Shown one piece after another: positions 33,102 to 55,000 of a stretch of 64,000 nucleotides of DNA. This DNA comes from Mytilus edulis (taxonomy: Eukaryota), in the NCBI RefSeq assembly GCF_963676685.1, contig NC_092352.1, forward strand, positions 32,984,001 through 33,048,000, given 5' to 3'. Under the pieces are notes generated by a model that ran no database searches, was not told the DNA's origin, and saw nothing but the letters and a program-made list of their open reading frames with translations. The position numbers and the translations under genes were made by a program. How positions within the stretch are numbered: the stretch's first letter is position 1; every line of letters starts with the position of its first letter.

Positions 33102-33964
33102 CAGATTCTTCTCAGTCTTTCAAATATGGTATGTGTCAACTCCATATAGAAATAGCATTTGCTTCAGAGGCTTTTCCATCCTGGTATCTAGACTATGATG
33201 ATTTTACGACAAAATTAAATCCTGGTATATATCTATGATGATTTTATTTATTTTCAACCACTGGGTTAGTCTCGATCATCCAGCCGCTTTATTTTTCAAA
33301 GTAGAGCGTCTGGATGACAAGTGATATAAAAATGGTAATTTATGACATTCGGAATAGTATCGGCTTTTTTAGCTTGTTGTCAAAGATAATGTCCAAGACG
33401 AATAACCAAGAAGTTGGTTATTGACTTCGGAAGAAATGACATTACGATAATATTATTGAAAAGCCCGAGTGTACCGATTGTTGTTTAAAGCTATTTATAT
33501 ATTTTTGTGACGACATACAATTCATGGAAAACACCATACAGCATGGCTTACATGGAACTGGAGGCGAAGTAAAAACCAGCACATCCAACCTTGGTAAGAT
33601 GTTATAACAACACACACTGTAACATAAATTGCAAGTAGTAGTTATATTCTTTCATGCATGTCCGTGCAACGAAAACGAGTTTATAATTATACAATAAATG
33701 TCAATTGTTATGTTGACTGGGACCACTCGATCAGTCGTATACGTTATAAATACATTTTGGGTTGATGTGTAGTATCGTTAACTTTAATATGAGGCAGGCA
33801 AAACCTGTGAATGGGACGTAGTCGGCAAACCAGTTTACTTGGTAGCTGTGAACACCCGAAAATTAAAATTATGGCTACAGACTATCTTTTGCAAACAATC
33901 TTAAGATATTTTCTGCATGTGTCACAGTGTGTGCATAAATTATAATTATTTTTTACTTTTATGT

Positions 33965-34735
33965 AGTCAGGGGACTTACTTAAACAAGTGATTTTCTAAA
34001 TCACTGATTCAAGTAACATTATTTCCATAAAGGTTGGAAGTTAGAGTTGTCTTTCTTTAATAATCACCTATTTAAGTAGTACAAATTAATCACTAGAAGA
34101 AGTGATTTAATATTAGTGTAGCTTTAAATATAGAATACTAATGATCCAGGGACTAATTATGTTTCTAAACTTATCAGAACCAACATCTGTGTTGTCTAGG
34201 ATGACCAGGTCATTTCAGGTGATGACCTTGTACTGAATCTAGGATAATGACATAAAAATCACTTGTTTAAGTATCAGACCTCAATTTATTTCCCAAAAAT
34301 CACTTCTTTAAGTATCATTCTTTTAATAACCCCCACTAATTTCAACACCCCCGAACAGTGAAATTTTTATCGCGAACAGTAGAATTTTATTACATAATCT
34401 GAAAGATGAAACCTTGAACTTCACAGGAAAAATACTCCCACTGCTGTGAAAAATCTTTTAAGAAAGTATCAGTTCATTATGTAAAGCCATTATTATAGCA
34501 TTTTTTCAACTAAAATAAAATTTTCAGGTAAATGATAGCATTAAAGGCATAAACCTTGCTACTTAAAAGAAGCAAAAAGTTTATATTTTTTTATTTTACT
34601 AATTAAAAGATGTTATTTAAACCTATGTGTTTAAAATTTTGAAAAAACTACAAAATCCCAATTTGTGACAAAACCTCGAATTTGCTACTCAAATAAGTGA
34701 TTTAAAAATCACTTATTTCAGTAAGTCCCCTGACT
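33965..34735. mobile_element. MITE / non-autonomous TIR element
   Basis: ~40-bp imperfect TIRs agtcaggggacttact..aagtgattt / aaatcactt..agtaagtcccctgact, with internal aaatcactt motifs. Confidence 0.75.
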
Positions 34736-36739
34736 GGTGATATACATACATGTAAAAAAATGTAACTTACATTTGTTATTGATCCAAGTTGTTACCATGT
34801 ATATAAATCAGGTATAATCATGCAGATATTTCAGCATTCCAACGTGTGTGTGCAACTTTCATATGTAGTTAGTTCCCTGTTGATATACACAAAATAGAAA
34901 AGTTATTTCCTTTACTCAAATTGAAATATGTTTAAAAAGGAATGTCTCCTCATTGTAAATACAATCAAACAGGCCAATGACTTTAATAAAAGAATACCTA
35001 TGACACATTTATTTAACTAAAACTTAATAATACCCTATTGATTTTATTGATAATCAAATAATCATGATTAACAGTTTTATAACAAACAATTTTCACTGTT
35101 AAATTCGGCAATATAAATTCAGTTTGGAAAATATAAAAAACTTAAGTTATAATGGTTTCACCTTCAAAGTATATAACTTTCTGTTACCTTCTTGAGTATA
35201 AGACTTATTTACTGTTGTAAATGCACATGCAGAAAATAAAAACTTCAAAGACAATGAACAGATGAAAGAACAACAACATGTACAATTGCAAAGATTTAAG
35301 AACAAGCATACATTTCTCAATACAACAATCAACAGTCAACAAATTGTGTCTTACTCAGAGTGGACTGTAATTTCTTCGTTATACATGTACATAAACTTGA
35401 TCTGACATGGTTCATGATATTGTCACTGGTTGTACTGTCCTTTTGGAAACCCTTGGGCCTTATTTAACAAGGGGATTTACTTGAAATATTTTATAGTTTA
35501 TAGAACTTTTAAGAGGTGCACTACATTGTTGTGTATATATATATATATATATACCTTTAGATAGAAATCAATCTGCATGCAAAGTGCAGACATATAGGCA
35601 GCATTATAAATGAGCATTATGATTATTGCATAAAAGTAAAAAAAATTATTAGGAAATTATATAAATTTAACTTTACTATATGATGCTTTGGTAAAATTGG
35701 GCTAGTATGTTAAGTTTGATTGTGAACATTGGATAGTTGTTTAATTGGCAATCATACCACATCTTTTTATTTTTATAATGATATTAAGGTAACTTCTTTA
35801 TAATCTTCCAATGGTACAGAGTAATCTTACTATAATGTAAAAATGTATCATTGAAGTCAACAATTGTTTTAAATTTAATGTCTAACTCTTTACTCTTTAG
35901 CGAATGTTTAGTACATGTATGTATTGATGAAACAAATTAGTCATATGAACAGTACTAATTAATTAACTTAAAAAAAATAACAGCTTTCCATTTCTGATTA
36001 ATGCAAGTCATAAATAAGTTTACTGTATGTATAAAATTCATGTGAGAAAAAAATAATTTAAAGGTCAATTTTCTTTGTATACTTGTAAATAAACATTAAT
36101 CATTTGTTAATAGATATATATGACATATAAAATAGATGTGTACTTTGTTTACTAAATAAAGTTCATGGTACAATATATGTTCACTCAATGTTACAAATTT
36201 GTTTTATAGTAAGATTTTGCAACCCGCTAGAAACTAGTATGTCACCTGCAGGGTTACAATAGGTATATTTTAAAGAGAACAGCCAATAAATGTATTAATT
36301 GTACAATAAAGGTACACGACCAATGACTGTATAAAGTATACAATAAAAGTACCAGCTAGAGATTGGTATATCCCCTGCATGGTGATTGGGACATGATAAT
36401 AAAAAAATAAAAGTAAAACTTTAGGCAATACATGTACATATGTATTTCATCGTATTTCTCAATCCATACAGCATGACCTTATACAAAATATTTAAAGATA
36501 ATTTCAACCAGTCAAATATAAATATTATAATCATGTAAATCTTTGATATTTTATAAAATAAGCAGGTTTATTTTTTAATCTATTTTTGATATTCATTTAT
36601 AAGGACAAAATTATAATTCCACTTTGTAATCCATATATAAATGAAATGATTTTTATTAATTTCAATATTTATATAAATGCTGATCAAGAAGTATAATAAA
36701 AATATATTTGTGAAAATGTAGACACCAAGCTACCTTTAA

Positions 36740-37336
36740 GGTGGTATAGGAGTCTAAAATAAAAATGATAGAATTTGTTCATACTTTGCCAAACCGTATT
36801 TTCTATTGATACATTTTGAAAAATATAATAGAAATGATAGGTCACCGCGCATTTTCTCAAGCTACAGGACGGAACAAAATGACACATTTTGTATGGATTA
36901 TACAGGAAAAAACACCATTTTGTGATTAGAAACTAAACAAAATGATAGAATTGTTAAATACTTCAGGAAAAGATAGCTTTCAGACACTGCTTTGAGAATA
37001 TCAAAAGTAAAGATAAGGTCACCGTACGTTTTTTCCGGCTAAATTACAAAATAGGAAAATTCCATGTAGAATCCTTCAGAAAAAGCACTGTATTAGAGTT
37101 ATCTCCCCTTAAAATGCCAATGTAAAAAAAATTAAAAACAACCAAAAATAATTAACATAAATTTGCAAAAATATCAATATTTATAAGTTATTTTCTTATT
37201 AATTGGTTCTCATAAATGAAAATTCACATTAGATAACCTGCATTCCTGTATCAAATTTTGCTAACAAGATGGAAAATCTGGACCTTTGGTTCTCTTTTTT
37301 TTACAATCCAAGTTGGAGGAAGACACCCATACCACC
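36740..37336. mobile_element. Kolobok-like MITE
   Basis: TTAA|ggtggtataggagtct ... agacacccataccacc|TTAA. Confidence 0.75.
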
Positions 37337-37354
37337 TTAATTCCTATAAAAAAA

Positions 37355-38077
37355 TTATTGTTTTAAAATTTCATGCTGTATGGAGGTACACATATTTGTG
37401 TACCACTCTTCATATAACTCCTCTGTAGGATGTACTCCATCATACAGATTTTGATAGTTGTAACGGTAATATTTTTTGTTTCTTCTGATTTTCATTTTGA
37501 TCATTGTTTTGTCCCATCTAATGTTTGAAACCCCCCCATCTTTATTTAAATCCATAATTTCCTGGTTGATGTAATCAACATCCAATTCCAGCTCTTTTTG
37601 CATTTTGTCAATTTCTACATCAGAAAATATGCTTTGCCTCAGCCTATACTGCTGTTTTTTGAATTGATACCTGTTTAAGTTGAAATCCCTATATTTGTTT
37701 ATGCAGGCTGGGACAATTGACACAAATTGAACAGGTATATTATTTACTAATAAATGTGCTTGAATACTTCTCAACTCTGAGACAATATTAACAACATTGC
37801 TGTTGTCTCTTATATACCTTAACTCTGTACCATTTTCATGGCTGACCTTTTCTGTAAGGTTACACAGTCCTGCTGCTAATACAACCCTTATATTTTTATG
37901 ATCAATAGATACAATTTCATCTTTTATACCTTCATAAATTTGACCTATTGTCCCCCCTGGTCTCACAAGTACATGGGTATTGAAATGTGTCCCAAAGCAC
38001 ATGTTGCGCTCTATATAATCATATAAACGCGACCCCCTGGAAGTACAACCAAAAACTATGTGTCCAAGTGCACTCAT
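37355..38077 (-). CDS. SGNH/GDSL-hydrolase-like protein (240 aa)
   Basis: Block I-like VFGCTSRG, block II-like RPGG, block III AAGLCNL, block V YDGVHP. Intact single-exon ORF with a splice acceptor (ttacag) ending 11 nt upstream of the ATG. Confidence 0.75.
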   Translation of the reverse strand: MSALGHIVFGCTSRGSRLYDYIERNMCFGTHFNTHVLVRPGGTIGQIYEGIKDEIVSIDHKNIRVVLAAGLCNLTEKVSHENGTELRYIRDNSNVVNIVSELRSIQAHLLVNNIPVQFVSIVPACINKYRDFNLNRYQFKKQQYRLRQSIFSDVEIDKMQKELELDVDYINQEIMDLNKDGGVSNIRWDKTMIKMKIRRNKKYYRYNYQNLYDGVHPTEELYEEWYTNMCTSIQHEILKQ

Positions 38078-38191
38078 ATTTTAAAACCTGTAACAAATTA
38101 TAATAAATCATAACTAATACTGAAATGAAATAAAAGTTACAATAGTATATATATATGTTTACTCAAGCATTATTTTACTGTGTAATCATTA

Positions 38192-38373
38192 GGCAGCAAC
38201 CATTTGATTTTCAGGGGGGGGCTATGGTTTGTTTTCAGGTTTTGGTGAAAAAAATAATTTGTTTTGGAACCTGATAAAAAAATAGATTGTCCTTCGCCGA
38301 AGGCGAAAAGAAAAGTTTGCACTGTCAGAAAAAAAAACATAGCCCCCCCCCAGAAAATCAAATGGTTGCTGCC
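38192..38373. mobile_element. PIF/Harbinger-like MITE
   Basis: TTA|ggcagcaaccatttgattttc..gggggggctatg ... catagcccccccc..gaaaatcaaatggttgctgcc|TTA. Confidence 0.8.
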
Positions 38374-38575
38374 TTAGCCATCTCAAGCTACTAAGCTGAA
38401 GTGATTCATCTTAGTTGAGAAGATTCAGAACATTTGTGTAAGCCAAGGCTACATTTTGAAGGCTAAATACTTTGACCTAAAATGGTTAACTTTTACAAAT
38501 TCTGACTTGGATGAATGGTTGTGTCATTGGCACTCATACCATATCCTATATCTATATAGTATGACAAAAAAATAC

Positions 38576-41500
38576 GAGATTGGAATGTCCCATACCACAT
38601 GTACCACTGGCATGTCAGATGAGCTAGTATATTGGTTATTGGTTGGAGACTGGTATGTCCCCTAACATTGGCATGTAGGATGAGCAAAAATTGTGTTATT
38701 GGTTAGAAACTGGTATGTCCCCTACCATAGGCATGTTGGATGAGCAAAAATGTTTTTTGTCAGTTAGAGACTGGTATGTCCCCTACCACTGGAATGTTGG
38801 ATGAGCAAAAATGTTGTTATTGGTAAGAGACTGGTATGTCCCCTACCACAGGCATGTTGGATGAGCAAAAATGTTGTTATTGGTTAGAGACTGGTATGTC
38901 CCCTACCACAGGCATGTTGAATGAGCAAAAATGGTGTTATTGGTAAGAGACTGGTATGTCCCCTACCATTGGTTTGTTGGATGAGCAAAAATAGTGTTAT
39001 TGATTAGAGACTGGTATGTCCTCTACCATTGGCATGTTTGATGATCAAAAATGGTGTTATTGGTTAGACTGGTATGTCCCCTACCATTAGTTTGTTGGAT
39101 GAGCAAAAATGTTTTTTGTCAGTTAAAAACTGGTATGTCCCCTACCACTGGAATGTTGGATGAGCAAAATGTTGTTATTGGTTAGAGACTGGTATGTCCC
39201 CTACCACAGGCATGTTGGATGAGAAAAAATAGTGTTATTGGTTAGAGACTGGTATGTCCCCTACCATTTTCGTGTTAAATGAGCAAAATGTTGTTATTGG
39301 TTAGAGACTGGTATGTCCCATACCACAGTCATGTTGAAAGAGCAAAAATAGTGTTATTGGTTAGAGACTGGTATGTTCCCTACTATTGGCATGTTGGATG
39401 AGCAAAATATTGTTATTGGTTAGAGACTGGTATGTCCCCTACCACAGGCATGTTGGATGAGCAAAAATAGTGTTATTGGTTAGAGACTGGTATGTCCCCT
39501 ACCATTTTCGTGTTAAATGAGCAAAATGTTGTTATTGGTTAGAGACTGGTATGTCCCAGACCACAGGCATGTTGAAAGAGCAAAAATAGTGTTATTGGTT
39601 AGAGACTGGTATGTCCCCTACTATTGGTTTGTTGGATGAGCAAAAATAGTGTTATTGGTTAGAGACTGGTATGTCCTCTACCATTGGCATGTTTGATGAG
39701 CAAAAATGGTGTTATTGGTTAAAGGCTGACATGTTGGATGAGCAAAAATGTTAGTTATTGGTTAGAGTCTGGTATGTCTCCTACCATTGGCATGTTGAAT
39801 GAGCAAAATGTTGTAATTGGTTCGAGACAGGCATGTAGGATGAGCAAAAATAGTGTTATTGGTTAGAAACTGGTGTGTCCCCTACCACAGGCATGTTGAA
39901 TGATCAAAAATGGTGTTATAGGTAAGAGACTGGTATGTCCCCTACCATTGGTTTGTTGGATGAGAAAAATAGTTTTATTGATTAGAGACTGGTATGTCCT
40001 CTACCATTGGCATGTTTGATGATCAAAAATGGTGTTATTGGTTAGAGACTGGTATGTCCCCTACCATTGGTTTGTTGGATGAGCAAAAATGTTTTTTGTC
40101 AGTTAAAAACTGGTATGTCCCCTACCACTGGAATGTTGGATGAGCAAAATGTTGTTATTGGTTAGAGACTGGTATGTCCCCTACCACAGGCATGTTGGAT
40201 GAGCAAAAATAGTGTTATTGGTTAGAGACTGGTATGTCCCCTACCATTTTCGTGTTAAATGAGCAAAAATAGTATTATTGGTTAGAGACTAGTATGTCCC
40301 CTACTATTGGCATGTTGAATGAGCAAAATGTTGTAATTGGTTAGAGACAGGCATGTAGGATGAGCAAAAATAGTGTTATTGGTTAGAGACTGGTATGTCC
40401 CCTACCACTGGAATGTTGGATGAGCAAAAATGTTGTTATTGGTTAGAGACTGGTATGTCCCCTACCACAGGCATGTTGGATGAGCAAAAATAGTGTTATT
40501 GGTTAGAGACTGGTATGTCCCCTACCATTTTCGTGTTAAATGAGCAAAATGTTGTTATTGGTTAGAGACTGGTATGTCCCATACCACAGGCATGTTGAAA
40601 GAGCAAAAATAGTGTTATTGGTTAGAGACTGGTATGTCCCCTACTATTGGCATGTTGGATGAGCAAAATATTGTTATTATTGGTTAGAGACTGGTATGTC
40701 CCCTACCACAGGCATGTTGGATGAGCAAAAATAGTGTTATTGGTTAGAGACTGGTATGTCCCCTACCATTTTCGTGTTAAATGAGCAAAATGTTGTTATT
40801 AATTAGAGACTGGTATGTCCAATACCACAGGCATGTTGAAAGAGCAAAAAATAGTGTTATTGTATAGACTGGTATGTCCCCTACTATTGGCATGTTGGAT
40901 GAGCAAAATATTGTTATTGGTTAGAGACTGGTATGTCCCATACCACAGGCATGTTGAAAGAGCAAAAAAAGTGTTATTGGTTAGAGACTGGTATGTCTCC
41001 TACTACTGGCATGTTAGATGAGCAAAAATGTGGTTATTGGTTAGAGACTGGTATGTCCCCTACCACAGGCATGTTGGATGACTGAGCAAAAGTGGTGTTA
41101 TTGGTTAGAGACTGGTATGTCCCCTACCACAGGCATGTTCGATGAGCAAAAATGGTGTAATTGGTTAGAGACTGGTATGTCCCCTACCACAGGAATGTTG
41201 GATGACTGAGCAAAAGTGGTGTTATTTGTTAGAGACTGGTATGTCCGCTACCATTGGCATGTTGGATGAGCAAAAAAGTTGTTATTGGTTTAAGACTGGT
41301 ATGTCCCCTACCACAGGCATGTTGGATAAGCAAAAATAGTATTATTGGTTAGAGACTGGTATGTCCCCTACCATTTTCGTGTTAAATGAGCAAAATGTTG
41401 TTATTGGTTAGAGACTGGTATGTCCCATACCACAGGCATGTTGAAAGAGCAAAAATAGTGTTATTGGTTAGAGACTGGTATGTCCCCTACTATTGGCATG

Positions 41501-42235
41501 TTGGATGAGCAAAATATTGTTATTGGTTAGAGACTGGTATGTCCCATACCACAGGCATGTTGAAAGAGCAAAAATAGTGTTATTGGTTAGAGACTGGTAT
41601 GTCCCCTACTACTGGCATGTTAGATGAGCAAAAATGTGGTTATTGGTTAGAGACTGGTATGTCCCCTACCACAGGCATGTTGGATGACTGAGCAAAAGTG
41701 GTGTTATTGGTTAGAGACTGGTATGTCCCCTATCACAGGCATGTCCGATGAGCAAAAATGGTGTTATTGGTTAGAGACTGGTATGTCCCCTACCACAGGC
41801 ATGTTGGATGACTGAGCAAAAGTGGTGTTATTTGTTAGAGACTGGTATGTCCGCTACCATTGGCATGTTGGATGAGCAAAAAAGTTGTTATTGGTTAAAG
41901 ACTGGTATGTCCCCTACCACAGGCATGTTGGATAAGCAAAAATAGTATTATTGGTTAGAGACTGGTATGTCCCAGCTACCATTGGCATGTTGGATGAACT
42001 AAATGTTGTTATTGGTTAGAGACTGGTATGTCCCCTAATACAGGCATGTTGGATGAGAAAAATAGTGTTATTGGTTAGAGACTGGTATGTCCCCTACCAC
42101 AGTAATAATGGATGAGCAGAAATGTTGTTATTGGTTAGAGACTGGTATGTCCCCTACCATATAGGCTTAGGAAAAATAGTGTTATTGGTTGGAGACTGGT
42201 ATCTCCCTTACTACACAAATGTTGGATTAGCAAAA
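38576..42235. repeat. ~60-61-bp satellite array, about 60 units
   Basis: Consensus ttattggttagagactggtatgtcccctaccacaggcatgttggatgagcaaaaatagtg. Variant units recur in higher-order blocks; edges are degenerate. Confidence 0.97.
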
Positions 42236-42263
42236 AAAAATTAAAAAAAGTTTCATAATGCAT

Positions 42264-45200
42264 TTATTCTTCATGTCGAAGATCAGTTGTTTCCCTGAAT
42301 TTATGTAAAATTTTGCTATTACTTATAAATGAGTATTTAGAAAAAGTTGCATTGGATAAATTTTGAATTCTTTTAATTTCTAAGTCTCTAGCTCTAGTTG
42401 TAGGAGTATTAACTATGTGACATAATCTGTCTTGATTGACTAAGACTGCAGGGTGCCATGCAAAGTCTGGTGGTGTTCTATCATCACCTGCAGTCTTAGC
42501 GCGCGACAGTGCTACAAATAAAGCTCCAGGGGTAAGTGATTCAAACTTTCGTGTGCCTGGATTAATAACAATATATCTACTTGATTCTCCCTCTCCAATA
42601 GTCATACCTTGACATCTATGTATTGTAGTGCCCCAGCCCAGCCTGAGTGGTATTTGGGTTATAGAACATGAATAGCAAAAACAATCAATTTTTCGTTTAA
42701 TAGGTGTAATAGGTACAATTTTTACATCATGGTTTACAAAAGGTGGTCCAGTATATTTTTGAAATTTTACCATCACACAAACTGGTTGACAATCTTTTGG
42801 AGTTTTGCCTTCAGGGTAGATAATTTCGACAACCGTCCCAGTTGAACCATTGAACAGGCCAAATTTCACATGTAAGTTTGTTGTCAACATAACTTTACAA
42901 CCTATGCATAAATAAACGGTCGGAAGTAAGCCTTTAGCGTTTTCACTGGATACACCCTTTGCATGTGAACCATGAGAAATGGCATCTACTTTTGCTATTG
43001 GATTTCTTTCATTTGCTTTTAAAATTTTTGTTTTATTATGAAGCCATTCTTCGTTATGGGTAGGAAAAACAAAAAGACTATTTTCATCCATGTCATCTAT
43101 AAACGATTGACCATGTGACTTAAGGAGGTCTCCCCATTGAAATTTTTGCAGCCAGGTTGCATGGTCTTGAGTAAGTTTGTACTCTCTTAAAGCACCAAGG
43201 ACATTTTTAAAATAAGATTGATCCTCTGCTTGGCGGACTACAGTTTTTAATAATACTGCCTCGTTAAATTCTTTCCAAACAAGTGCACCATGCATACCTG
43301 CTGGGCTTTTTGAATTTGCTTTATATACAGGAGTATCTAAAACTGGGGGCAGTTGCACATCATCACCAAGAAAAATTACAACAGGGAGCCCCCCCCCCCC
43401 CAGGATTGAGAAGCATTTAAACCTTTTTGTACAGCACATCTACACATGTACTCCATCCAACCTAACGTTGTACATCCAATTAAAGAACGCTCATCCACTA
43501 TAAGTACTTTTAAACCTTCACAGTTTTTTTGTAAAATTTCACCGGTAGAGCCATCAGGAGCTTTCATTTCTTTTGACTTATATGTTGTGGGAATTTTTAA
43601 AAAGCTATGTATGGTTACACCATCTATTAAATTAGCACTGTTACCAGTAGGACAGAGAACTTGTACACACTTATTTGTATTAAAAAAACATTTCACTGCT
43701 TTTACCAAGCACTTAATTAGATATGTTTTGCCACATCCTGCACTGCCACCTACAATCAGTCTTAATGGAGTAAAATTAAGTGGGTTATTTTGAAAATCAA
43801 ATAATGCTTTCATAACTAAATTAAAGGCAAACATTTGGTCTTCATTTAAAGATGAAATATTTATATCTGTATTAAATGACAGTTCATCAACAGAAATGCT
43901 TTCTTCAATTTTCAAGTTCTCTATAAATTTTACTCCCAAGTCTGCAGGATAATTATAGTTTGTGACGGACCAGTTATAATCTGGTCCCCCATCATCAAAC
44001 TTAAATTCTGAATTGTCTGTGAATTCTGCATTTGGTTTAATAACTTGGATCCACTCTGGCTGAGACATGTTTTCAAATTCAGAATTATCATCGTCCGACT
44101 TATCATCCACAAGTCCATTTTGTGCTGCATTATTTGCTCGTTCAACGTCTGCCTTTACAAAGTTTGGACAATAGTCAGTTAATAAAAAATGCCTGAATAA
44201 ATCATTCCAACTTACATTATCATCTTTAATGTCTGAAAATTTTCTCCAGTCATGCCAATGAAGAATAAGGGTATTTTTACAATAATTTTCTGTAAGGGGA
44301 CATGTTGCTCTGAGACTTCCACCTGATATAACAGGGACTTTTCCACTTTTGCAAATATAATTGTACCACGAACAGTGATCATTTTCTGGACGGGATAAAT
44401 ACTTATCTAATGGGGTCAGTTTTGTAGCAGTGGATCCATTTTTTTCTAGTATTCGTGCACCAGTTAAACTTATATTTTGAAATGCATGGCTTGATCTATA
44501 TAGAGGTAAAGCAGACAGTTCAAAAGAGGTTTCAACAGCTGAAATATCTCTTTTAACAGTTCCCATTAATAATTTTGTACATAGTGATTTGGTATTAGAA
44601 CCGGTTGTTTCATCAGCACTATTTACCATATCATTAAATAAATCTGCCACAGCCCCTGTAGGTTCATTGCCTTTACATGCATAACCACTAACATATTTTT
44701 CTACTGCAATAATTTCATTAACAGAGGGATTTTCAGGCCCACTCTTTGAAAGAATTAGAGATATATCACCATTTGCTCGCCATGCCTGTGTGTGTATTTG
44801 AGAATGTTGGACCAGATTAGGGTGGTCCCTCTCCATCTCTAAACGTAAGGATCCATTTCTATCTTTTACTATTGCTGGATTATCTCTAACGGTTTTACCT
44901 GGGTTTAATGATGTGCCAAACTCCATACGACACTGTTTAACTGGATTAGAGGGGTTATTTCTAGGGGCACGAAGACAATAATCTGAGCACCTATGCAGAT
45001 TTATTCTGTTACATAGAAGTAAATGATCTTCCAAGATACTTTCTTGTGATTCACTTACATCCATAAGCAATTTATTTAGTGGATTTTTTTCATCAGGAGG
45101 GGCTGGGGCAGTGCCTTCTGGTGGAGGCCACAGATTTTTTTTGGGCTTATTGTTTTCATCTAGCCCTGCAGGATGGTTTGCAGTCATTTTGTATTCTAGT

Positions 45201-48200
45201 TTAGCCCAGTCAGAGAGAAGTTTTGCACATTCGTCATCTGTTTTTCCATCAACGTAAGCTTGGTGCATAAGATTGTGAGGTTCTTTGTCAAATCGCCAAC
45301 ACAAACCATGCCAATGTATCATACCTCTTGACTTTGAAAATTCTTGCCTATACCAATAACTATTAACCCCAAATACAGGTCCCATAATCTCTTTGAAATA
45401 GCTTTGAGTTCTTTTATCAAAATAATCTCCAACAATGTGTGTATTATCTTGTACAGCTTTGAACATTTTGTTGTGGTCATTTAAATCAATTTCGTTGCCA
45501 GTTGTTTCTTTAATGTAAAGGGAAAGGATTCGTTTCAGTGGTTTAAAGTAAAATTCTGCACAACTGCCAGTGGTAAAAAAAGATGGTAGACCCTGACCTT
45601 CATTAATTTTATACTGAATAAGGGCTCTTAATTCTTTTGATCTTTGATTCCAATATTGTGAAGTGCCTCTGAGGTTTGCACTGAAATAAAGAATTTTTTC
45701 AGCTACAGATTTATCTCCAGTTTGTAATTTAGCCTTCAAATCTGAAAGTGTTAACATATTTTCACCAAGTTTTTGTTGAACTATAAATGTACTATTATCT
45801 AGCACACGTTTTCTATTTATTATATTGTGAACAATGAATTTAAAAAATTTGTGCTTTGCAAAGCGGCCATCCTTATACCAAATTAAATGGTTTGCCCAGT
45901 CTGACATCGAAGAACATGTTAATGGGCGATTCATATGGAAGTCTGCACAAGCATGTGGAAATAAACATGGAAAAGCTAGTGTGAAAAAATGTCTTGTAGT
46001 AAACTCAGAAAGTGGAATCTTACCACGAGTTGGCCAAGGAATTGATACCTGACCTTTTTTATTAATAGAAATGTTAGTATTTTCTTCTGTAGCAATTTCA
46101 TCAACAGCATCTTGTATTTTTTGTTTAATATCAAAACATGGTTCTGGAAGCAAAACACTAGATATAGTTTCTCCTTCCACATTACCTGGATCAATTTGCT
46201 TTGGTGCTGGACCCTGATCATTTAAATGTCCAACATTAGAGTTATACTCTAATGTATGAATGTTTTGTATTTGCCCATCCTCTGGTAATAAATTTAAACG
46301 TTCTTCACTTATTTCTATGTCAGAATAAGCCGGATTATTTTTTTTTAACCATATAAGGGCTATTTGTACTTTTTGCCGCCTGACATTGAATTCTTTTGAT
46401 GTATCGTTTTTTCCTATTTTCCTAACTCTTATTATATTAACTTCTGAAGGAAGTTTAGGTAAAATTTTGCCAGGTTCATTTACCTCTTGTGGAAACGCCA
46501 CACAGTGGCCATTTGCAGCAATACCCCCATGTTTTAACATGTGTATATTTATGCAAGGTGAAATTCGGGAAATTAATTGCTCTTCAACAACAGATAAATT
46601 TGCTAGTTCTAGGGGTACTTCTCCAGGATTCATATTATTTTCAGTAGAAAACATCTTAATTACAACTTTATCTTTAAAACACCTTTCACATACACTGTTT
46701 TTTTTTCAAATTAATCTTTCTTTCAAAACAAACTGAACAAACATCAATTGTGTAAGACATTTCTTGTAGTTCAAAAGAACGAATGCAGTTAACTGCCTTG
46801 TTAAAATGCTCATCATCAGCAAATGGAGGTGGATCTGGTATTGTCTCAAAATTTATATTTAGTTTATTTAGTTTGTATTTAATTTTATTATAATTTTTCA
46901 AGCATCTTTTTTTATATTCATCTGGAGTTTCATTTTCAACAGGTGGGTCATATGTTAAACCCAGTTTTCTGCATTTAGTTTGCAGGTCTAAATCTTTTTC
47001 TGTTTGATTGTTAGTCATATTTGTTTTATTGTGAGTTTCAAGTACCGGATTGTCAGCAATTGTATTTGTTGACACACTGTTTTGGCTATAATTTAGAGAA
47101 TCTCCAGTATTGAAATGTTCATTGTTGACAGATGTATGTGATATTTGTGCTGTTTTTTTATTTTTCATGATCTTAATTCTTCTCTTTATTCTCAAGCATC
47201 TTTTTTGGTATTCTTTTGCAGACTCATTTATATTTGGAAGCTCATATTTGATACCTTGCTCTATACATTCAACCTGCAGTTCTTGATCTCGATTGATTTT
47301 TTTAAGTGACTTATTATCAATTGACTTTATAATTGGCATGTTTTTAAATTTTTCAGAAATATGATTTTCTGACATACATGTAACATTTGGAAGGTAAACA
47401 ATTTTTTGTTTTTTTTCAGGAACGGTTAAATGTTTAAAATTGAATTTTCTCTTAATACTGGCGTTACCATTTTTATTTGATATTGCATATTTATTTTCAT
47501 TTAATTGTGACAGTAAAATAATTGGTTGTTGTGGAATTTTTCTCAACAGTTGAAAATGGTTATGGCTAAGTAAAATATTTATTGTTCTACTCTGAGGTGA
47601 GTGGATGTATTGCTCTTTGGTAAAAACTGTTTTGTTTGCCAAGTTTGTTCCTTGTATCCAGATATTTATATTGCTTTGAGTAATTTTTGATGCCATTGAT
47701 ATCTCACAAGAGGTTGCCCATCCTCTTCCATTGACCATTGTTTGTAAATAAATATCCCTTGTGATATTGTTATAATGGGATAGTTTTAGAATATCCTCAT
47801 ATATATAAAAATTGTTGTAAATTTCTGAGCATGATAATGAGCGATAGACATGTGTCTGGGAGAAATCCCCATTTATAGCTAAACTAAGTGATGAGAAAAA
47901 GCAATTTCCATCTCCAGGAACATCATATATGAAAAAGTTATCGTTTTCTATAGCAATCACTCCATTGTGGGGCACATTTAAAAAAGATTGTTTCTGTGCT
48001 AAATGCTGTGTGTCTTTTTTGTTGTGTGATTCTGGAATACATTCCTCAGCTTCAGATTTAATAACAGTATCTAATTTAGAATAAATGGCTTTAGTTTTTG
48101 TATTTTGGGACTTGACTACATTTGCATATGTTTGCTCACTATTTAGTGGAGAACTTGAAGCATAAACCTGTGTAGAACTTGGAGTAACATTGAAGACTGG

Positions 48201-48300
48201 CATAATTTCATTCTTGTCTCCGGTTTTCTTGGGAACAAATTTAACAACATCAGCAAAAGTTAAATTGGGAACTAAATATGAAAAATCATCAGTTTTGCAA
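42264..48300 (-). CDS. Helitron-like Rep/helicase polyprotein (OTU protease, C4 zinc finger, HUH-Y2 endonuclease, PIF1-family helicase), ~2000 aa after correcting two homopolymer frameshifts
   Basis: OTU VPGDGNCFF..WATSCEI..HF; FFTTGSCAE; YWYRQEFSKSRGMIHWHG (HUH); KYVSGYACK (Y2); GSAGCGKT, DERS, GDDVQLPPV, TIHRCQGMT, VALSR (PIF1). Breaks fall at T9 (46698-46706) and C13 (43389-43401). Confidence 0.9.
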
Positions 48301-48538
48301 TATTATAATGATGATTTGAATGTTTGTCAAAAGAATGACCATTGACCGGTGTATCATTCATATTAGCATATGAATGGTCACTGGTTCTGTTCTGCATATT
48401 ATCAAAAGAATGGCCATTGACCAATGGCAATGCATAACGAGCATATGAATGGTCACTGCCACTATAACTTTTAATGTTCTGCATTTTATCTCTGTTTTCC
48501 TTCTTAAAATAGTATATAATTAAGATGGCAACTTTCAA
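48272..48538 (-). CDS. Probable N-terminal segment of the Helitron-like protein with duplicated SDHSYA..VNGHSFD motif
   Basis: Overlaps the upstream open extension of ORF 46686-48203 in another frame; contains an internal ~75-bp duplication. Confidence 0.4.
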   Translation of the reverse strand: MKVAILIIYYFKKENRDKMQNIKSYSGSDHSYARYALPLVNGHSFDNMQNRTSDHSYANMNDTPVNGHSFDKHSNHHYNIAKLMIFHI

Positions 48539-49291
48539 TTCAATTCACACTTACAAGTAGTTCTTTGGCAAATATATATAACGGGTTTTGATGGTCTTGA
48601 AAATTTAAGGGTTGTCAGCGAGCCGATAGTCGTCTGCTAACGAACGTGCAGACGATTTTTTTGTGACAAGGAGACATTATATATGGCAATCCTATGAATT
48701 TAATGGCAGTTACTATGCGGTAATGTACTTGTAGAATTGATATGTAAAAAAAATATACATTATAAAAGGTAAAAAAGGACTAAAACTTGATATTTTAATG
48801 TAAACAAGAAGCGTGTTGCTATGAAGCCACCGGCCATCTTTCCAGTTGTTAAGAAGCTGATGTGTATCAATACCGACAAGTGATAAAAACTAGCGATGAC
48901 AAATGAATAAATGTTGAATTACTTGATATAATTTTAATCTTTGTTCTATTTTTGTTACATATCAAACGAATAACAAATTGACACTAAACTAGTCGAACGT
49001 TAATCGTAAAAAGGGACACGAAAAGCATATGCATGGTAATGTTATTGTGTTGTAGTCCGTACTCTTTTTGGTATTCATATTTATTTTTTAAGATTGTTCG
49101 TCAGCAGAACCGGAATAGATTTTAAAAAGTCGATCTGCGCCGATGCTTCACTACCGGTAACTACTTCTGCGCCGGTCCGGGATTTCAAAACATGACATAA
49201 AAAAAAGTTAACGATTTTGAGTTCATTAGTACAATGAAAAATTCGGGAAATTTTCCCGTATTTTTTTTTTTATTGAATTTTCTACTGTTAT

Positions 49292-49321
49292 TGGGGACTC
49301 CGTCCCCATATAAATACTTGA
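49292..49321. other. Candidate terminus of the Helitron-like element (GC-rich hairpin)
   Basis: tggggac-tcc-gtcccca stem-loop followed by tataaatacttga|t; a second hairpin cgggaaattttcccg lies at ~49244-49258. Confidence 0.5.
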
Positions 49322-51195
49322 TGGAAAACTGCTAAGACGCCGAAATATCACCTTCATCCAAGATATGTTTGTTGTATCTATCTAAATCTTGATATGTGTA
49401 AAAAAAAAAAAAGGGGGGGAGGAGAGATACACAATGATGACTGATGTACACTTTCAAAGAAAAACAAACAAAGTGTATCTAGGAGATGCTAGAAGATTTT
49501 ATACCAAATGGTCAAAATGATTTGTACATTCAATTTTCTGCAAAACAAAAGACAGTTAAACAATATATTCAGCATCAATGAAAAGACGTGTAAATGAGGC
49601 AGCAACCAGTGAATCTAATGCCATAAAATACCAAAAGTAGTCTAGAAATCGTCATGATTAACAGTTTATCATGTAGACTAAAACAAAAAGTGAAGATAAA
49701 ATTGCCAAAAGCTCAATATTACACAAATAAGGAGATGTGGTATGAATACCAATGTGAACTATCCACTCAAGTTCAAATCAATTGGATGTGAGTAATTATA
49801 GGCAACTGTATGGCCTTCAAAAATTAGAAAAATCCATGCATGGTTTGGATAGAGAAAATAAACAGGGAATGTGTCAAAGAGACACTGGGAAACCCGACAA
49901 AAAAGCAGTAAACAGTTCGATGTCACCAATGGGTCGGGTCTTCAACGCAGCAATATAATCTTGCACCCTGATGCGGGATTCAGCTTGCCCAAGGACAATC
50001 ATTTATACAATATATTTCTATGATGGTTTTTTTAAACAATTATATGCTATGCTGGTGACTAAAAATTAATATGATTTTAATATTTACTTTCTCTTGTAGA
50101 CAAACCAAATTGAATGATGATTTATGGACACAGATTTTATGTGTAAAATGTGAAGAATTAAAAAACATGTAATATTCAGGATTTTCATTGTATCATAACC
50201 ATGCTTCAACTTTATAAGAACAAAGTTCAAACCGAAAGATTTTTTTTTTAATTACTGAAGCATCAATCAGTTTAAATAGATCACATTACCAAACATGTTA
50301 GGTATACCTTATTTAGACAGCCGCCACAAATCGAAAAAAATACACAGACGTATATTGATTAAATGAAACAAATATCAAGAAACACATTGTTGTCAGACAT
50401 GGTAGGGAAATTAGATTTGTATTAACAAATTAAAAATCATATGAACAATTAAAGAGTTAGTTTTTACGGTTGAATTGTATCTCATTTTCATGTGGGGTCT
50501 TTTTATAGTTGAATATATGATACGGAGTTTTCTTGATATTAAAGGTCATGCAGTGATCACATTTGCGTATATCCATGTCATTTGAACTCTGCTGGGTTGC
50601 TGCCTCGTTAGAAATCATACCAATTTCCTTATATTTATTTAAAAGGTTCACATGAGAAGTTTTTGTTCTTGTGAATCTATCCTTTATTGCATGCTAATAC
50701 ATGATGAATATTATAAGAGTTGGAGAATTAGAATACACAATAAAAGTTACTATGCAGTATGAGATAAATCCCATTCCATCTTTTCCATGTACATGATTCA
50801 AACATGCATTCAAAGAGTATTGGGTTTCATGACTGACTGTTTAAGTTCTATATTTCTCCATGGACACGGGCTACACTTGCAAAGTGGTTTTGTGTGAAGG
50901 TTGGTTCCTACATATTTTCTTCCTAAAAGGATTAGGCGATTATTGGTGAAACAGCTAAGAAACATTCAGACTATTCTGTCGTTTGCAGTTTAAAGATCAG
51001 TTAATTTTGTAAATAAAAATTGAGTTGGCTTATTGTGTGATTTCGCTGATCTGCCAGTTATACCTGTTTAGGAAGTTTTTCTACATACGCAATCTTATAG
51101 TATTTTTATGAGATGTTTTTCTTTACATAGATGTAACTTGATGTGTGCTTTTTGGTAAGGTGAGTGCATCAGATTTATAAAAAATGACATCATAA

Positions 51196-51409
51196 GGGAC
51201 GACATCAAAAGTTCAATGAAGGATACAAAATTTAATTCACATAGTTTTGTCACTGACCCCCCAGCCCCTCTTAACTTAATTTGGGAAAAATTGATTGACC
51301 CATATGGATATATGTAAAAATCAATGTCGGATAACCAAATCTTGCAGCAGTTCAACCCCCACCCCCAAACTATTTGAATTAAGTTTTTTTTATCTTTTGA
51401 TGTCGTCCC
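51196..51409. mobile_element. PIF/Harbinger-like MITE
   Basis: TAA|gggacgacatcaaaag ... cttttgatgtcgtccc|TAA. Confidence 0.8.
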
Positions 51410-51902
51410 TAAGTTATTACAGGAATTTACAGAAATGAGAATAATGAGACAAAACGAGGAAAAATGGATAAAAAATAAAGAATAGAGACTAACGGTGACA
51501 CAATATACTGATGGTTGGTCGCTTAACGTCCAGTGACAAATATTTCATGCATGTTTAGGATGATGTAATAAAATACAAAGAGAGAATAATGGTATTTTAT
51601 AGTATGAAGATAAGGGAATAAAGTGGACAGGTGTGCAATAAAATAAAAATAGTTTAATCTTTGGTAGCGTTTTTATCGTCTTGTGGTAAATGAGGGTAAT
51701 GTTCATGATGAAAAGAAATTAACAATAATTATATAAAGGAGGTCCTAATTTATAGCCCGTTCGGAATACATTGGTTGAAATTATGACTCACTAAAAAATA
51801 AGGGTATATTGTATTGAAGCAGAAATATAGATTTAAGTATAACGGTCAACCTACGGACCCCTTTTGAAGCGTACAGAGAGCGTGGTATCCTCTATACACG
51901 AA

Positions 51903-52022
51903 CAGTGGCGGATCCAGAACTTGTTATTAGAGAGGGGAACTACACACACTCGTGCTACAGTGTTTCCCTACATAATCAACCACATTTTTCCTACGAAAAA
52001 AAATGGGGTGGATCCGCCTATG
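51903..52022. mobile_element. Small hAT-like MITE remnant
   Basis: cagtggcggatcca ... tggatccgcctatg imperfect TIRs; TSD not clear. Confidence 0.5.
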
Positions 52023-55000
52023 ACGAGTGTTATAATATTCAGTTACACAGGGTCGTAACTAGGCCTCAGAATAAATCTAGGAGGGCGTTTGGGTGCCGCC
52101 GTCTGCGGTACCCAGGTAATGGGGAAACCAGCCTGAGGGGTAACACAACCAGCCAAAAACTAGAAAAGTAGTTAATGATCAAGTCGAAGATAAAAACCAT
52201 GACAAAAAATGAGTAAAACTTATATAAATTACTTTTAATCAACGAAAAAAAATATCTGAATATATTTAAGCACGGCCAATTAAAGCTTAATTTTGACTCT
52301 TAGATCTTTATTACATGTTTATAAATCACTCAGTTTCAGACACAGGCACTTGTCGCAGAAAAAAAATTCCTATGATACATTTTTGTACCTTAATATAACG
52401 CATTTAAGGCCTGTGGTTTCAGACAAGAACTCCGAGAACAGGAATACGTGTGAAATGTTTTTTTAAGCAGTTTTATTTATTTGACGTTTTACCACCAGCA
52501 AGTTAGTTGGCCAACATAGAGTGAGCTATAAGAATGTCATATACATGTACATATACTACACTGTTTTCTGCTGGTTTTTTTTTTAATTATGTTGGGGATA
52601 ACGGAAATGCTATTTATAGATATGTTCTATATTTAATTATTTGTTACGCCCCCTATAAATATTTGACCAGTCCGGTTAATCACCCCAGACGTTATATTTA
52701 AATATGCGTCTGGGTAATCGAGACTACCACTGGGTCGATGCCACTGCTGATGGAGTTTTAAATCCTCGAGGTTATCACCAGCCCTGTAGTCAGCACTTCT
52801 GTGATGACATGAATTATCATTGATATGGTCATATTTATAAATTAACTGTTTACAAAATTTTTGAATTTTTTTTTAATAGTAAGGCTTTTCTACCTCAGAA
52901 ATAGATTACCTTAGCTGTATTTGTCAAAACTTCATACTTTATTTGGCCTTTTTAACTTTTTTGGATTCATGCGTCACTGATGAGTCTTTTTTGAAGAAGA
53001 AACGTGTGTCTGCCGTACATACAAAATTTAATCCTGGTATCTATGATGAGTTTATTTGAGTCTAGTTTTGTTTTCAATCTTTTTTTTTTATGTGTTCTCA
53101 GTCTGTGAAATATGGTATGTGTCAAATCCATATATAAATAGCATTTAATACAAATTAATTTTTTTCCAAACAATTCATATTTTATTCGTAAATGAACAAA
53201 TTAAGACATTTAGTTCATAATTTGGTCATGTTTGACCTTTGAAGTTCTTAATTGTCTTGGTTATTGGTTGTGTGCATTTCTCTTGGTCTACTATATTATT
53301 CATTAAAATAGCCAAAATATGTAATAATTGGTTAAAAAAATTGACCCATTGACTAATTTACAAACAAATTTTAGCAAGTTACAGGCAATAAACCTTGCTT
53401 CAAGGAAGCTGAGTCAAATAATATAGAATAAGATTGATTCAGAAATGAAATATACAGATGTTAATACAACTGCATACCAAATATCATTGACCTACCATAA
53501 ATGAATCCTTTAAAACGGACCTAATCGCAAACTTAAACAAATTGTTGCTACCACTGCTACAAACAGCATGCATAAGTGTTGCCTTCCTCTTTCGTCAAGA
53601 CATGTCAAAATTCATCTTTAAAGGCAAAAAGGAGGCTGACAATTACAATCATTTTTAATTATTTGTACATTTTGTGTAGTTGATCCTCTTTTATTTTAAT
53701 TTTTGTTCTTTTCTTTATCTATTATATATTCAAGATAGCTGCCACATTTGAAAAATATGAGAAAAATCTTTATAAGAAAATAATTTGCTCAAGAAATTAT
53801 CCTACTATTTTGATACAGATGGACAGATGGTACATCTTGACATTCTGCAAACTTTTTTTCTATTGTGCTAGATTTTCTTTTTCTGTTATAATTTTCAAGA
53901 TATTAGACAATACTTCCATTTGACACCTTTCTTTCATTTTAAGCCATGGTGGCTTTGTTAGTTAGTAGCTGGGATCATCAGACATTGTCAACAAAAATAT
54001 TCTAAGGATAATTCAGGCTTATTTCTATCCTGACTTGCCAACTTGTTTCAGAAGCTGTAAGGGTTGATGACAAACATCAAGTGACAGCAGTTATTCTGGT
54101 GAGCTTTCAAATCAAAATGTGGTGTGTTTATGTCAATGGGACAGCAATACAATAAATAAACTCATCATAGATACCAGAACTAAATTTAGTATATACGCCA
54201 GACGCATGTTTCGTCTACAAAAGACTCACCAGTGACAGTGACGCTTGAATCCAAAAAAGTTAAAAAGGCCAAATAAAGTACGAAGTTGAAGAGCATTGAG
54301 AACCAAAATTCCTAAAAGTTTTGCCAAATACAGCTAAGGTTATCTATGCCTGAGGTAGAAAAGCCTCATAAAACCACATAGAAAATAAAACATAAGATGT
54401 AATCTTCAGTTTACTATTCCATATGTCAGGGTCTGAAGCGTCACGATTCAGGACAAACCGTATATAAATTTCAAGACTACAAAACTGAAATTAAAGAACA
54501 AATAACACTAGATGTTAAAACAGACAACCATTGATTAGGTTTTCAAGTTCATGCCGTCACTCTTACATATAGCAGTGTTTAATTATATTTTTTTTTAACT
54601 CAACACTCATTTTTATAAATCTATCATTGGAAAAATAAAAGATAGAGAATTTGGTGACATTAAAAACAGAGAGGAAAAACAATAAAATATATTTTAAACT
54701 TTTTGCTGTTCATTACAGGCCAACAATTAATTCTTTGAAAGATCTCAAGGAACTGAATACTTTTTATGCCATTCATTCATCTTTGACACATTCCCCATTT
54801 CCATTCTAAATTTTATAAAAAGAATATACATTCATTGAAATGCTGCTTGAACTTGAGATCCTCATACCCTGTTGTCTGTGACTTCCATCAATGATGTATG
54901 AATATTCCAGGAGCATTAATAGACTACTTGAAGAAGTATGTATACAAAAATATATTGTTTCATGTAATTTATTTGTTATAACAAATATAAAAAGTGTATT

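What the first reader, a model, noticed from the sequence alone, without database searches (positions are those of the whole stretch)
33258..52735. 19.5 kb hairpin-ended, TSD-flanked unit carrying a rolling-circle transposase, satellite and hydrolase but no DDE transposase
Seen: a perfect 9-bp duplication ccactgggt flanks termini TAGTCTCGAT...ATCGAGACTA. Each terminus is itself a foldback (tcatccag.cgct/agcg.ctggatga at left; cccagacg/cgtctggg at right). Removing the unit rejoins the two halves of an interspersed repeat. The only long ORFs inside are OTU-HUH-PIF1 and SGNH. Known: Helitrons make no TSDs, while 8-9 bp TSDs point to DDE-type superfamilies (Mutator 9 bp; hAT and Zisupton 8 bp). 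Inference: either a non-autonomous cut-and-paste shell later invaded by a Helitron, or a composite that moves the whole Helitron/satellite/SGNH cassette as cargo. The second case would be an unusual two-mechanism element.
Basis: partly seen in the sequence, partly recalled or inferred. Interest (0 to 1): 0.8.

Follow-up and report, generated by a model that had tools for sequence, protein, structure and literature searches.

The report
Helitron nested inside a non-autonomous transposon
The 19.5-kb unit is one mobile element sitting inside another: a 15.5-kb rolling-circle (Helitron-type) transposon landed in one copy of a common, non-coding 3.6-kb cut-and-paste transposon of the mussel genome, and there is no sign that the pair ever moved as one.

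Summary
A perfect 9-bp duplication (33258-66 / 52727-35) flanks termini TAGTCTCGAT...ATCGAGACTA. Each terminus has a subterminal palindrome. Cutting the unit out restores an interspersed repeat.

The ends belong to a young family with 219 exact 21-nt termini in the genome. Eighteen full copies have 9-bp (15) or 10-bp (3) duplications. The usual length is 3.6-3.9 kb, with no coding capacity.

A sibling copy on another chromosome is 96-99% identical and runs straight across the point where the window copy holds 15.5 kb (33787-49310). Both shell/insert junctions are unique in the genome. The other four copies of the insert lie outside any shell. The "two-mechanism composite" is not supported.

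The insert is a low-copy Helitron/Helentron-like element. It has no target duplication, a 3' palindrome, and OTU plus Rep-PIF1 genes. It also has a private 3.6-kb satellite and an SGNH-fold gene. Three other copies share this layout. The SGNH gene is under purifying selection (dN/dS 0.11), which recalls the fish texim-Helitron association.

A 775-bp repeat sits inside the insert as a third layer.

The shell's transposase partner was not found, so "Mutator-like" rests on duplication length only.

The parts
33209..33266 (+). Left half of the interspersed repeat that was the insertion target. It ends with the left copy of the 9-bp target duplication (33258-33266).
   Evidence: other copies of the repeat run straight across the excised joint.
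33267..33317 (+). Left terminus of the shell: 10-bp perfect inverted repeat TAGTCTCGAT (21 nt at 18/21) plus a subterminal palindrome, CATCCAGCCGC..GCGTCTGGATG.
   Evidence: z -4.5. The first 80 bp are 100% identical in at least 40 other copies.
33267..33786 (+). Left arm of the non-autonomous shell element (520 bp).
   Evidence: 99.2% identity to sibling L062 and 91% to the canonical copy L061. Matches of other copies stop at 33786.
33787..49310 (+). Nested Helitron/Helentron-like element, 15,524 bp. The boundary is ambiguous by 2 bp (TA), so the target reads T|T, T|A or A|T. There is no target duplication.
   Evidence: Empty site in sibling L062. Other copies on C13, C11, C8 and C6.
33965..34739 (.). 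Third-level insertion: a 775-bp repeat with 31-nt inverted ends, absent from the sister Helitron copy on C13.
   Evidence: I3; more than 8000 first-look candidates at 96-99% identity, and the C13 copy joins query 179 directly to 954.
37355..38077 (-). 240-aa SGNH-fold hydrolase gene carried by the Helitron.
   Evidence: (motifs DSRG / PGAT / AGICNLT / DGVHP). Copies sit in the C11, C8 and C13 elements. dN/dS is 0.11 against the C11 copy.
38602..42236 (+). Central tandem-repeat array (60-nt unit, 179-nt higher-order unit, about 20 copies). It is private to this Helitron family.
   Evidence: found at only about 8 loci, including the C13 and C8 sister copies at the same position.
42264..46654 (-). 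Rep-helicase gene (DUF6570, Helitron_like_N, PIF1) in two overlapping frames. The frame break coincides with a run of 13 G at 43389-43402.
46686..48203 (-). OTU cysteine-protease ORF upstream of the Rep-helicase gene.
49165..49310 (+). Right terminal 144 bp of the Helitron, with the palindrome GGGGACTCCGTCCCC at 49293-49307. More than 1400 other loci share it, probably non-autonomous relatives.
   Evidence: z -3.9.
49311..52726 (+). Right arm of the shell, ending in the right terminus (palindrome at 52684-52713, inverted repeat at 52706-52726).
   Evidence: z -4.35.
52727..52870 (+). Right copy of the 9-bp target duplication (52727-52735) and the right half of the interrupted interspersed repeat.
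   Evidence: (about 2000 candidates at 90-94% identity).

Best explanation
Four layers of insertion are stacked at this locus.

(1) An old interspersed repeat with about 2000 copies was hit by one copy of a non-autonomous, TIR-bounded cut-and-paste transposon. That family has a 3.6-3.9 kb non-coding body, a 10-21 nt terminal inverted repeat followed by a palindrome at each end, and a 9-10 bp target duplication. The family is young: at least 40 copies share an identical 80-bp left end. It is most likely moved in trans by a Mutator-type DDE transposase. This is inferred from duplication length only.

(2) Later, a 15.5-kb Helitron/Helentron-like rolling-circle element inserted at position 520 of that copy, without a target duplication. 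Its own family layout is: left end, SGNH hydrolase gene, private satellite, antisense Rep-PIF1 and OTU genes, right end with palindrome.

(3) Later still, a 775-bp repeat inserted into the Helitron.

The composite is a one-off product of nesting. The shell's ends are intact, so it could in principle still be mobilised, but it has not been copied.
For: The shell is a family. There are 219 exact termini against 0 for the control. Seventeen other full copies carry 9/10-bp duplications, and a canonical copy has no ORF over 115 aa.

The empty site exists. Sibling L062 matches window unit 1-520 at 99.2% and continues directly at unit 16043 at 96.2%, with junction AACTTTA|TAAATAC.

The junctions are unique. 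In the searches spanning 33717-33856 and 49239-49378, only the window covers both sides. All other hits end at the junction. Contigs from public runs also carry shell copies reading ...TAAATACTTGATG straight after 33786.

The insert is an independent family with the same layout elsewhere. On C13:72079386-72091142 the order is left end, SGNH, satellite, RepHel with an internal deletion. On C8 the SGNH gene (49630764-49631460), the satellite (49631798-49637302) and RepHel (from 49637300) follow in that order. C11 holds an intact SGNH copy, plus a right part that is 100% identical over 6928 bp. None of these is next to a listed shell terminus.

Order of events: the 775-bp repeat is absent from the C13 copy.
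Against: No read or contig bridging the shell/Helitron junction at 33786/7 was shown. Only short contigs were available and most rows were hidden, so the junction rests on the assembly.

The search tool scores only the best 40 candidates, so a diverged second composite could be missed. A near-identical one would have ranked first.

No autonomous partner was found. No MULE (PF10551) or Merlin/IS1595 (PF12762) hit lies within 10 kb of any listed terminus. The superfamily assignment is therefore inference.
Confidence: 0.9

Rival explanations
1. The whole 19.5 kb is a functional composite. The TIR/hairpin ends and a DDE transposase supplied in trans move the Helitron, satellite and SGNH cassette as cargo. 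This would be a two-mechanism element.
For: The ends are intact and identical to those of a family that looks recently active. The 9-bp duplication is perfect. Nothing excludes future mobilisation.
Against: Both internal junctions are unique in the genome. A 96-99% identical sibling lacks the cassette. None of the 17 other full copies, nor the shell-end loci that could be oriented and read among the 60 fetched, carries it. The other Helitron copies lie outside shells (with the termini lists). The duplication is explained by the original 3.9-kb insertion.
Confidence: 0.03
2. The shell/Helitron join is an assembly artefact. A Helitron contig was stitched into a shell copy through shared repeats.
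For: No bridging contig across 33786/7 was listed in the only reads call. Both partners are repeats.
Against: The two breakpoints map to one and the same position of the shell, with a 2-bp overlap, against the sibling's empty site. This is what a real insertion gives and is unlikely for a mis-join. The Helitron ends there are its true family termini.
Confidence: 0.04
3. The shell family belongs to a superfamily other than Mutator: a hAT-like, P-like or Merlin-like element, or an undescribed transposase that reads the terminal palindromes.
For: No MULE-domain hit lies near any listed terminus. The TIR is short, 10-21 nt with a palindrome, and starts TAG like many hAT ends.
Against: Duplications are 9 bp in 15 copies and 10 bp in 3, never 8. 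From general knowledge of DNA transposon superfamilies, this fits Mutator/Foldback and not hAT or P. Merlin/IS1595 hits are not near termini either. Only 150 of 335 MULE candidates were scored, so a partner can have been missed.
Confidence: 0.3

Closest known systems
Non-autonomous Mutator-like elements (MULE / Foldback group)
   Same: It has terminal inverted repeats and a 9-10 bp target duplication whose length varies within the family. There are many non-coding copies with unrelated interiors behind the same ends. Very short deletion derivatives of 63-182 bp are still flanked by duplications.
   Different: The TIRs are short (10 perfect, 21 imperfect) and each is followed by a palindrome that repeats the motif CCAGnCGC in inverted order. 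No MULE transposase with these ends was found.
Helentron / Helitron2 elements and their HINE derivatives (Thomas et al. 2014, PMC4067079; Vojvoda Zeljko et al. 2020, PMC7492417)
   Same: Rep (Helitron_like_N) plus PIF1 helicase and an OTU protease ORF. No target duplication, and a palindrome a few bases from one end. A central tandem-repeat array lies between two flanking modules. The terminus is shared with a very abundant set of other loci. The Rep gene is antisense to the palindrome-bearing strand, as reported for Helentron-Da-40.
   Different: No AP-endonuclease domain was detected. The canonical 5'-TC...CTRR-3' ends are absent. The target can be read as T|T, T|A or A|T. The element carries an SGNH hydrolase gene, and its satellite is private to about 8 loci.
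texim SGNH-hydrolase genes associated with Helitrons in fish (Tomaszkiewicz et al. 2014, PMC4021074)
   Same: An SGNH-fold esterase-type gene travels with a Helitron in several copies and looks maintained (dN/dS 0.11).
   Different: That paper found the association in bony fish only, and not in amphioxus, sea urchin or Oikopleura. Here the host is a mollusc. Homology of the mussel protein to texim was not tested, because no texim sequence was on hand.
Ordinary nested transposon insertions
   Same: A younger element interrupts an older one, and a paralogous empty site proves the order.
   Different: Nothing essential.

Membership tests
Mutator-like (MULE) DNA transposon, non-autonomous | Target site duplication of about 9 bp (8-11), variable within a family | tested here: met
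   Fifteen copies with 9 bp and three with 10 bp. Mini-elements have 9 or 10 bp.
Mutator-like (MULE) DNA transposon, non-autonomous | Terminal inverted repeats shared by all copies | tested here: met
   10 bp perfect and 18/21 overall. There are 219 exact 21-mers against 0 for the control.
Mutator-like (MULE) DNA transposon, non-autonomous | An autonomous partner with the same ends encoding a MULE-type DDE transposase | tested here: inconclusive
   None of 142 PF10551 hits lies within 10 kb of a listed terminus. Only 150 of 335 candidates were scored, and not all 97 canonical left ends were listed.
hAT superfamily | 8-bp target site duplication | tested here: not met
   No copy has 8 bp. All have 9 or 10.
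Merlin (IS1595-like) superfamily | IS1595-type DDE transposase linked to the ends | tested here: not met
   All 51 candidates for PF12762 were scored, giving 47 hits. None is near a listed terminus.
Helitron (rolling-circle) superfamily, for the 15.5-kb insert | Rep/HUH domain fused to a PIF1-type helicase | tested here: met
   Helitron_like_N at E 1e-21, PIF1 at E 4e-10, and the PIF1 2B domain.
Helitron (rolling-circle) superfamily, for the 15.5-kb insert | Insertion without target duplication, shown by an empty site | tested here: met
   The sibling shell L062 has AACTTTATAAATAC. Only a 2-bp TA overlap remains.
Canonical Helitron (Helitron1) | Ends 5'-TC ... CTRR-3' | tested here: not met
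   The ends read (TA)ATATGAGG ... GTCCCCA(TA) on either strand.
Helentron sensu stricto | AP endonuclease domain C-terminal to the helicase | tested here: not met
   No endonuclease family among the Pfam hits of the three ORFs at E 0.01.
Helentron / HINE structural type | 3' palindrome, central tandem repeats between two flanking modules, OTU ORF | tested here: met
   Palindrome at 49293-49307 (z -3.9). Array at 38602-42236. OTU. The criteria come from PMC4067079 and PMC7492417. The subterminal inverted repeats are only approximate (11 of 13, read by eye).
SGNH/GDSL hydrolase | Flavodoxin-like SGNH fold with the Ser, Gly, Asn and His blocks | tested here: met
   AlphaFold pLDDT 96. The top Foldseek hits are GDSL-like lipases, E 2e-8, TM 0.58-0.68. 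S13, G41 and H216 are invariant and D213 nearly so in 56 relatives. The Asn of the CNLT block is in the consensus but not in the 90% list. There is no Pfam hit for the protein itself.
Composite (two-mechanism) transposon | The composite itself present at more than one site with the same internal junctions | tested here: not met
   Each junction occurs once in the genome.

The most novel reading that the evidence does not exclude
The SGNH hydrolase is not passive cargo but a selected accessory gene of this mussel Helitron lineage, homologous to the fish texim genes. If so, the Helitron-SGNH partnership is far older or more recurrent than the 'captured in bony fish' view. Separately, the shell family may be driven by a transposase not yet recognisable as MULE, one that reads the paired CCAGnCGC palindromes.
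Probability: 0.25. Interest if true: 0.45.

Novelty: new member of a known kind. Interest (0 to 1): 0.2.

Why it matters
The exciting reading was a cut-and-paste shell that ferries a whole rolling-circle transposon. It can be set aside, because this is ordinary nesting.

What remains useful is annotation. There is a young, probably still mobile non-autonomous TIR family with hairpin-like ends, and at least two unrelated interiors sit behind the same ends. There is also a low-copy Helentron-like family in the mussel. Its satellite and SGNH gene are part of the element, and the SGNH gene is under purifying selection. That is a lead on why Helitrons repeatedly carry SGNH esterases.

Tried and rejected
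(1) Autonomous partner.
- I looked in the larger copies: 5.3, 5.6, 10 and 14.5 kb, and the 8-kb second family (L080). They hold other insertions, including a reverse transcriptase in the 14.5-kb copy, or no ORF at all.
- The longest frames of shell copies have no Pfam family.
- MULE and IS1595 domain hits genome-wide do not fall near the listed termini.

(2) The SGNH protein.
- Pfam, PDB sequence search and the word-based protein search gave nothing useful.
- Only the exhaustive HMMER search plus a structure model settled the fold.

(3) Reads.
- The single read-laying run had only short Logan contigs. It shows shell copies without the Helitron, and in run X16 a 570-nt contig bridging flank to shell.
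- It cannot show whether this locus is polymorphic, nor bridge 33786/7.

(4) Earlier notes of the scan gave no terminus information for mussel Mutator elements.

(5) I considered an HUH/hairpin (IS200-like) mechanism for the shell because of its palindromic ends. I rejected it because every copy has a 9-10 bp duplication.
Full report
**Observation**

The string ccactgggt stands at 33258-33266 and again at 52727-52735. It directly abuts TAGTCTCGAT (33267-33276) on the left and ATCGAGACTA (52717-52726) on the right.

The repeat finder extends the inverted repeat to 21 nt with 18 matches: TAGTCTCGATCATCCAGCCGC against GCGTCTGGGTAATCGAGACTA. Each end carries a palindrome just inside the 10-bp core. 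As single-stranded DNA, the terminal 60 nt fold at -10.7 kcal/mol (left) and -11.5 kcal/mol (right). Shuffles average -3.4 and -4.1, giving z -4.5 and -4.35, and no shuffle out of 200 folds as well.

ORFs of 120 aa or more inside the unit are four, all on the minus strand:
- an OTU protease ORF (46686-48203);
- an ORF with DUF6570, Helitron_like_N and the first half of PIF1 (43376-46654);
- an ORF with the rest of PIF1 (42264-43439);
- a 240-aa ORF with no Pfam hit (37355-38077).

A tandem array with a 60-nt unit and a 179-nt higher-order unit fills 38602-42236.

**The ends belong to a real, young family**

The first 80 nt of the unit recur at 100% identity in at least 40 places, out of 128 first-look candidates. 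The last 80 nt recur at 96-99% identity. The degenerate 21-mer TAGTCTCGATYAYCCAGMCGC has 219 exact hits against 0 for the reversed control.

Seventeen left/right pairs were fetched whole. All have a target duplication: 9 bp in 14 and 10 bp in 3. With the window copy this makes 15 and 3. Most copies are 3.6-3.9 kb.

A canonical copy has no open frame above 115 aa, and the longest frames of several copies hit no Pfam family. The larger copies hold other insertions, for example a reverse transcriptase in the 14.5-kb copy.

A second family of 20 copies, 6-10 kb long (example L080, with the 9-bp duplication GCACTTGTC), shares only the roughly 50-nt ends with their palindromes. It has no interior similarity to the first family and no ORF.

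Mini-elements of 63, 69, 72, 81 and 182 bp consist of little more than the two ends. They still carry 9- or 10-bp duplications at unrelated sites.

Together these are the marks of a cut-and-paste family moved in trans.

**The target**

The right flank belongs to an interspersed repeat with about 2000 first-look candidates, and matches begin exactly at the duplication. Inside a script only, I joined the left flank (with one copy of the duplication) to the right flank and aligned the result with five other copies of that repeat. They run across the joint without a gap...TTTATTTACAACCACTGGGTCGATGCCACTG....

**The interior is a later insertion**

The canonical copy L061 maps to 33267-33786, and then to 49500-52726 in three blocks. 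The decisive copy is L062 (C8:25780610-25786197):
- it matches unit positions 1-520 at 99.2%;
- it continues without a break at unit position 16043 at 96.2%;
- it matches the last 840 nt at 98.1%.

Its sequence at the joint is GTTAACTTTATAAATACTTG. The window has GTTAACTTTA-ATATGAGG... on one side and ...GTCCCCATA-TAAATACTTG on the other. The window copy therefore holds an extra 15,524 bp (33787-49310). The boundary is ambiguous by the dinucleotide TA, so the target may be read T|T, T|A or A|T. There is no target duplication.

**The composite has not been copied**

I searched 140-nt probes centred on each junction. Only the window matches both sides. On the left, shell copies stop at probe position 70 and Helitron copies start at positions 66-69. 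On the right, the many relatives of the Helitron end stop a few bases after the junction. A near-identical second composite would have been the top-ranked candidate.

The other copies of the insert lie at C13:72.08 Mb, C11:32.71-32.75 Mb, C8:49.61-49.65 Mb and C6:34.55 Mb. No listed shell terminus is near any of them.

**What the insert is**

It is a low-copy rolling-circle element with Rep (Helitron_like_N, E 1e-21) and PIF1 helicase, an upstream OTU ORF, and no AP endonuclease domain.

Its right end carries the palindrome GGGGACTCCGTCCCC, one to three bases from the terminus (z -3.9). The last 144 nt recur at about 97% identity in more than 1400 first-look candidates. Contig depth and loose ends suggest that the first ~29 nt of the left end are also widely shared. 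This fits an autonomous element with abundant non-autonomous relatives.

The features listed for Helentrons and HINEs are a 3' palindrome, central tandem repeats between two flanking modules, an OTU ORF, no duplication, T-rich targets and occasional antisense Rep (PMC4067079; PMC7492417). These fit, except for the missing endonuclease and only approximate subterminal repeats. Canonical TC...CTRR ends are absent. I file it as Helitron-superfamily, Helentron/Helitron2-like in structure.

That the palindrome marks the 3' end, so that the genes are antisense to the transposed strand, is inference.

The Rep-helicase reading frame changes once. The change coincides with a run of 13 G (43389-43402), where profile positions 127 and 140 of PIF1 lie about 16 codons apart. 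I cannot tell a true frameshift from a homopolymer length error.

**The layout is the family's own**

The C13 copy has the same left end (98%) and the same 3.9 kb up to the array (97%). It has the same satellite, then the RepHel region with a 1.5-kb internal deletion.

On C8 the order is SGNH (49630764-49631460), satellite (49631798-49637302), then RepHel from 49637300.

The satellite is found at only about eight loci, so it is private to this family.

The C13 copy lacks window 33965-34739. That stretch is a 775-bp repeat with 31-nt inverted ends and more than 8000 first-look candidates. It is therefore a third-level insertion in the window copy.

**The 240-aa gene**

It has no Pfam or PDB sequence hit, and the word-based search found only two Mytilus edulis entries. 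The exhaustive HMMER search found 295 relatives, mostly 230-300 aa.

In an alignment of 56 relatives the conserved blocks read DSRG, PGAT, AGICNLT and DGVHP. S13, G41 and H216 are invariant. Six members touch Lipase_GDSL weakly.

The AlphaFold model has pLDDT 96 and pTM 0.92. Its best structural matches are GDSL-like lipases and acylhydrolases (E 2e-8, TM 0.58-0.68).

The C11 element holds an intact copy. It differs from the window copy by 27.7 synonymous and 14.3 non-synonymous changes (dS 0.23, dN 0.025, dN/dS 0.11). The gene has therefore been kept by selection while travelling with the element.

A precedent exists. The texim SGNH hydrolase genes are associated with Helitrons in several fish, and that paper reports no such association in amphioxus, sea urchin or Oikopleura (PMC4021074). 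Whether the mussel protein is a texim homologue was not tested.

**Superfamily of the shell**

From general knowledge of DNA transposon superfamilies, a 9-bp duplication that sometimes reaches 10 bp points to Mutator/Foldback and argues against hAT or P (8 bp). This is the only positive evidence.

None of 142 MULE-domain hits (150 of 335 candidates scored) and none of 47 IS1595 hits lies within 10 kb of a listed terminus. The partner is missing, diverged at its ends, or unscored.

**Reads**

Only short Logan contigs were available. They show:
- shell copies that read TAAATACTTGATG directly after 33786, that is, shells without the Helitron;
- a 570-nt contig in run X16 that bridges the left flank into the shell (33098-33500, 2 differences);
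- no listed contig across 33786/7.

The Helitron/shell junction thus rests on the assembly. It also rests on the fact that both breakpoints map to one position of the sibling's empty site.

**Limits**
- Earlier notes of the scan name the genome as blue mussel and had already flagged the RepHel-satellite-SGNH cassette.

**Verdict**

This is ordinary nesting of known kinds of elements, with two modest leads: the SGNH gene under selection in a mollusc Helitron, and a hairpin-ended non-autonomous family without a visible partner.

Noticed in passing
window 33965-34739: A 775-bp repeat with 31-nt inverted ends (AGTCAGGGGACTTAC...). It has more than 8000 first-look candidates at 96-99% identity, so it is very abundant and young. 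No obvious target duplication is visible at this copy.
   Followed up: partly
L086 (C4:76847139-207), L087 (C9:73986798-869), L088 (C10:22756886-948), L089 (C3:34845181-261), L091 (C4:6897200-381): Mini-elements of 63-182 bp made of just the two TIR + palindrome ends. Each has its own 9- or 10-bp duplication. They either moved as such or are in-place deletion remnants.
   Followed up: partly
L090 (C3:61736062-61736268): A 207-bp element with the same 10-bp ends but no duplication. Its flanks are reverse complements of each other (cgaccgtttcca / tggaaacggtcg), as if it sat at the centre of a larger palindrome.
   Followed up: no
L080 (C1:95197305-95205364) and 19 further loci: A second non-coding family, 6-10 kb long, shares only the roughly 50-nt ends with the window's shell and has no interior similarity.
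   Followed up: partly
G000 C11:32713294-32752251: Mosaic Helitron locus. The right 6928 bp are 100% identical to the window copy, but the SGNH gene 25 kb away differs at dS 0.23 and the left end is only 86% identical. The family satellite was not detected between them. This could be recombination between lineages or two adjacent elements.
   Followed up: partly
window 43389-43402 (minus strand): A run of 13 G inside the PIF1 helicase coding region coincides with the only frame change of the Rep-helicase gene. The C11 copy is reported 100% identical over this stretch, so it presumably carries the same run.
   Followed up: partly
window 33209-33266 + 52727-52870: The host of the shell is an interspersed repeat of about 190 bp with about 2000 first-look candidates at 82-94% identity. 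It was not classified.
   Followed up: no
window 33098/33099: Contigs of three public runs diverge from the window at this point, with loose ends of 167-255 nt. This suggests another insertion/deletion difference between individuals or species just left of the unit.
   Followed up: no
window 53108-53146: A 39-nt stretch 95% identical to 33122-33160 of the left flank lies just right of the unit.
   Followed up: no
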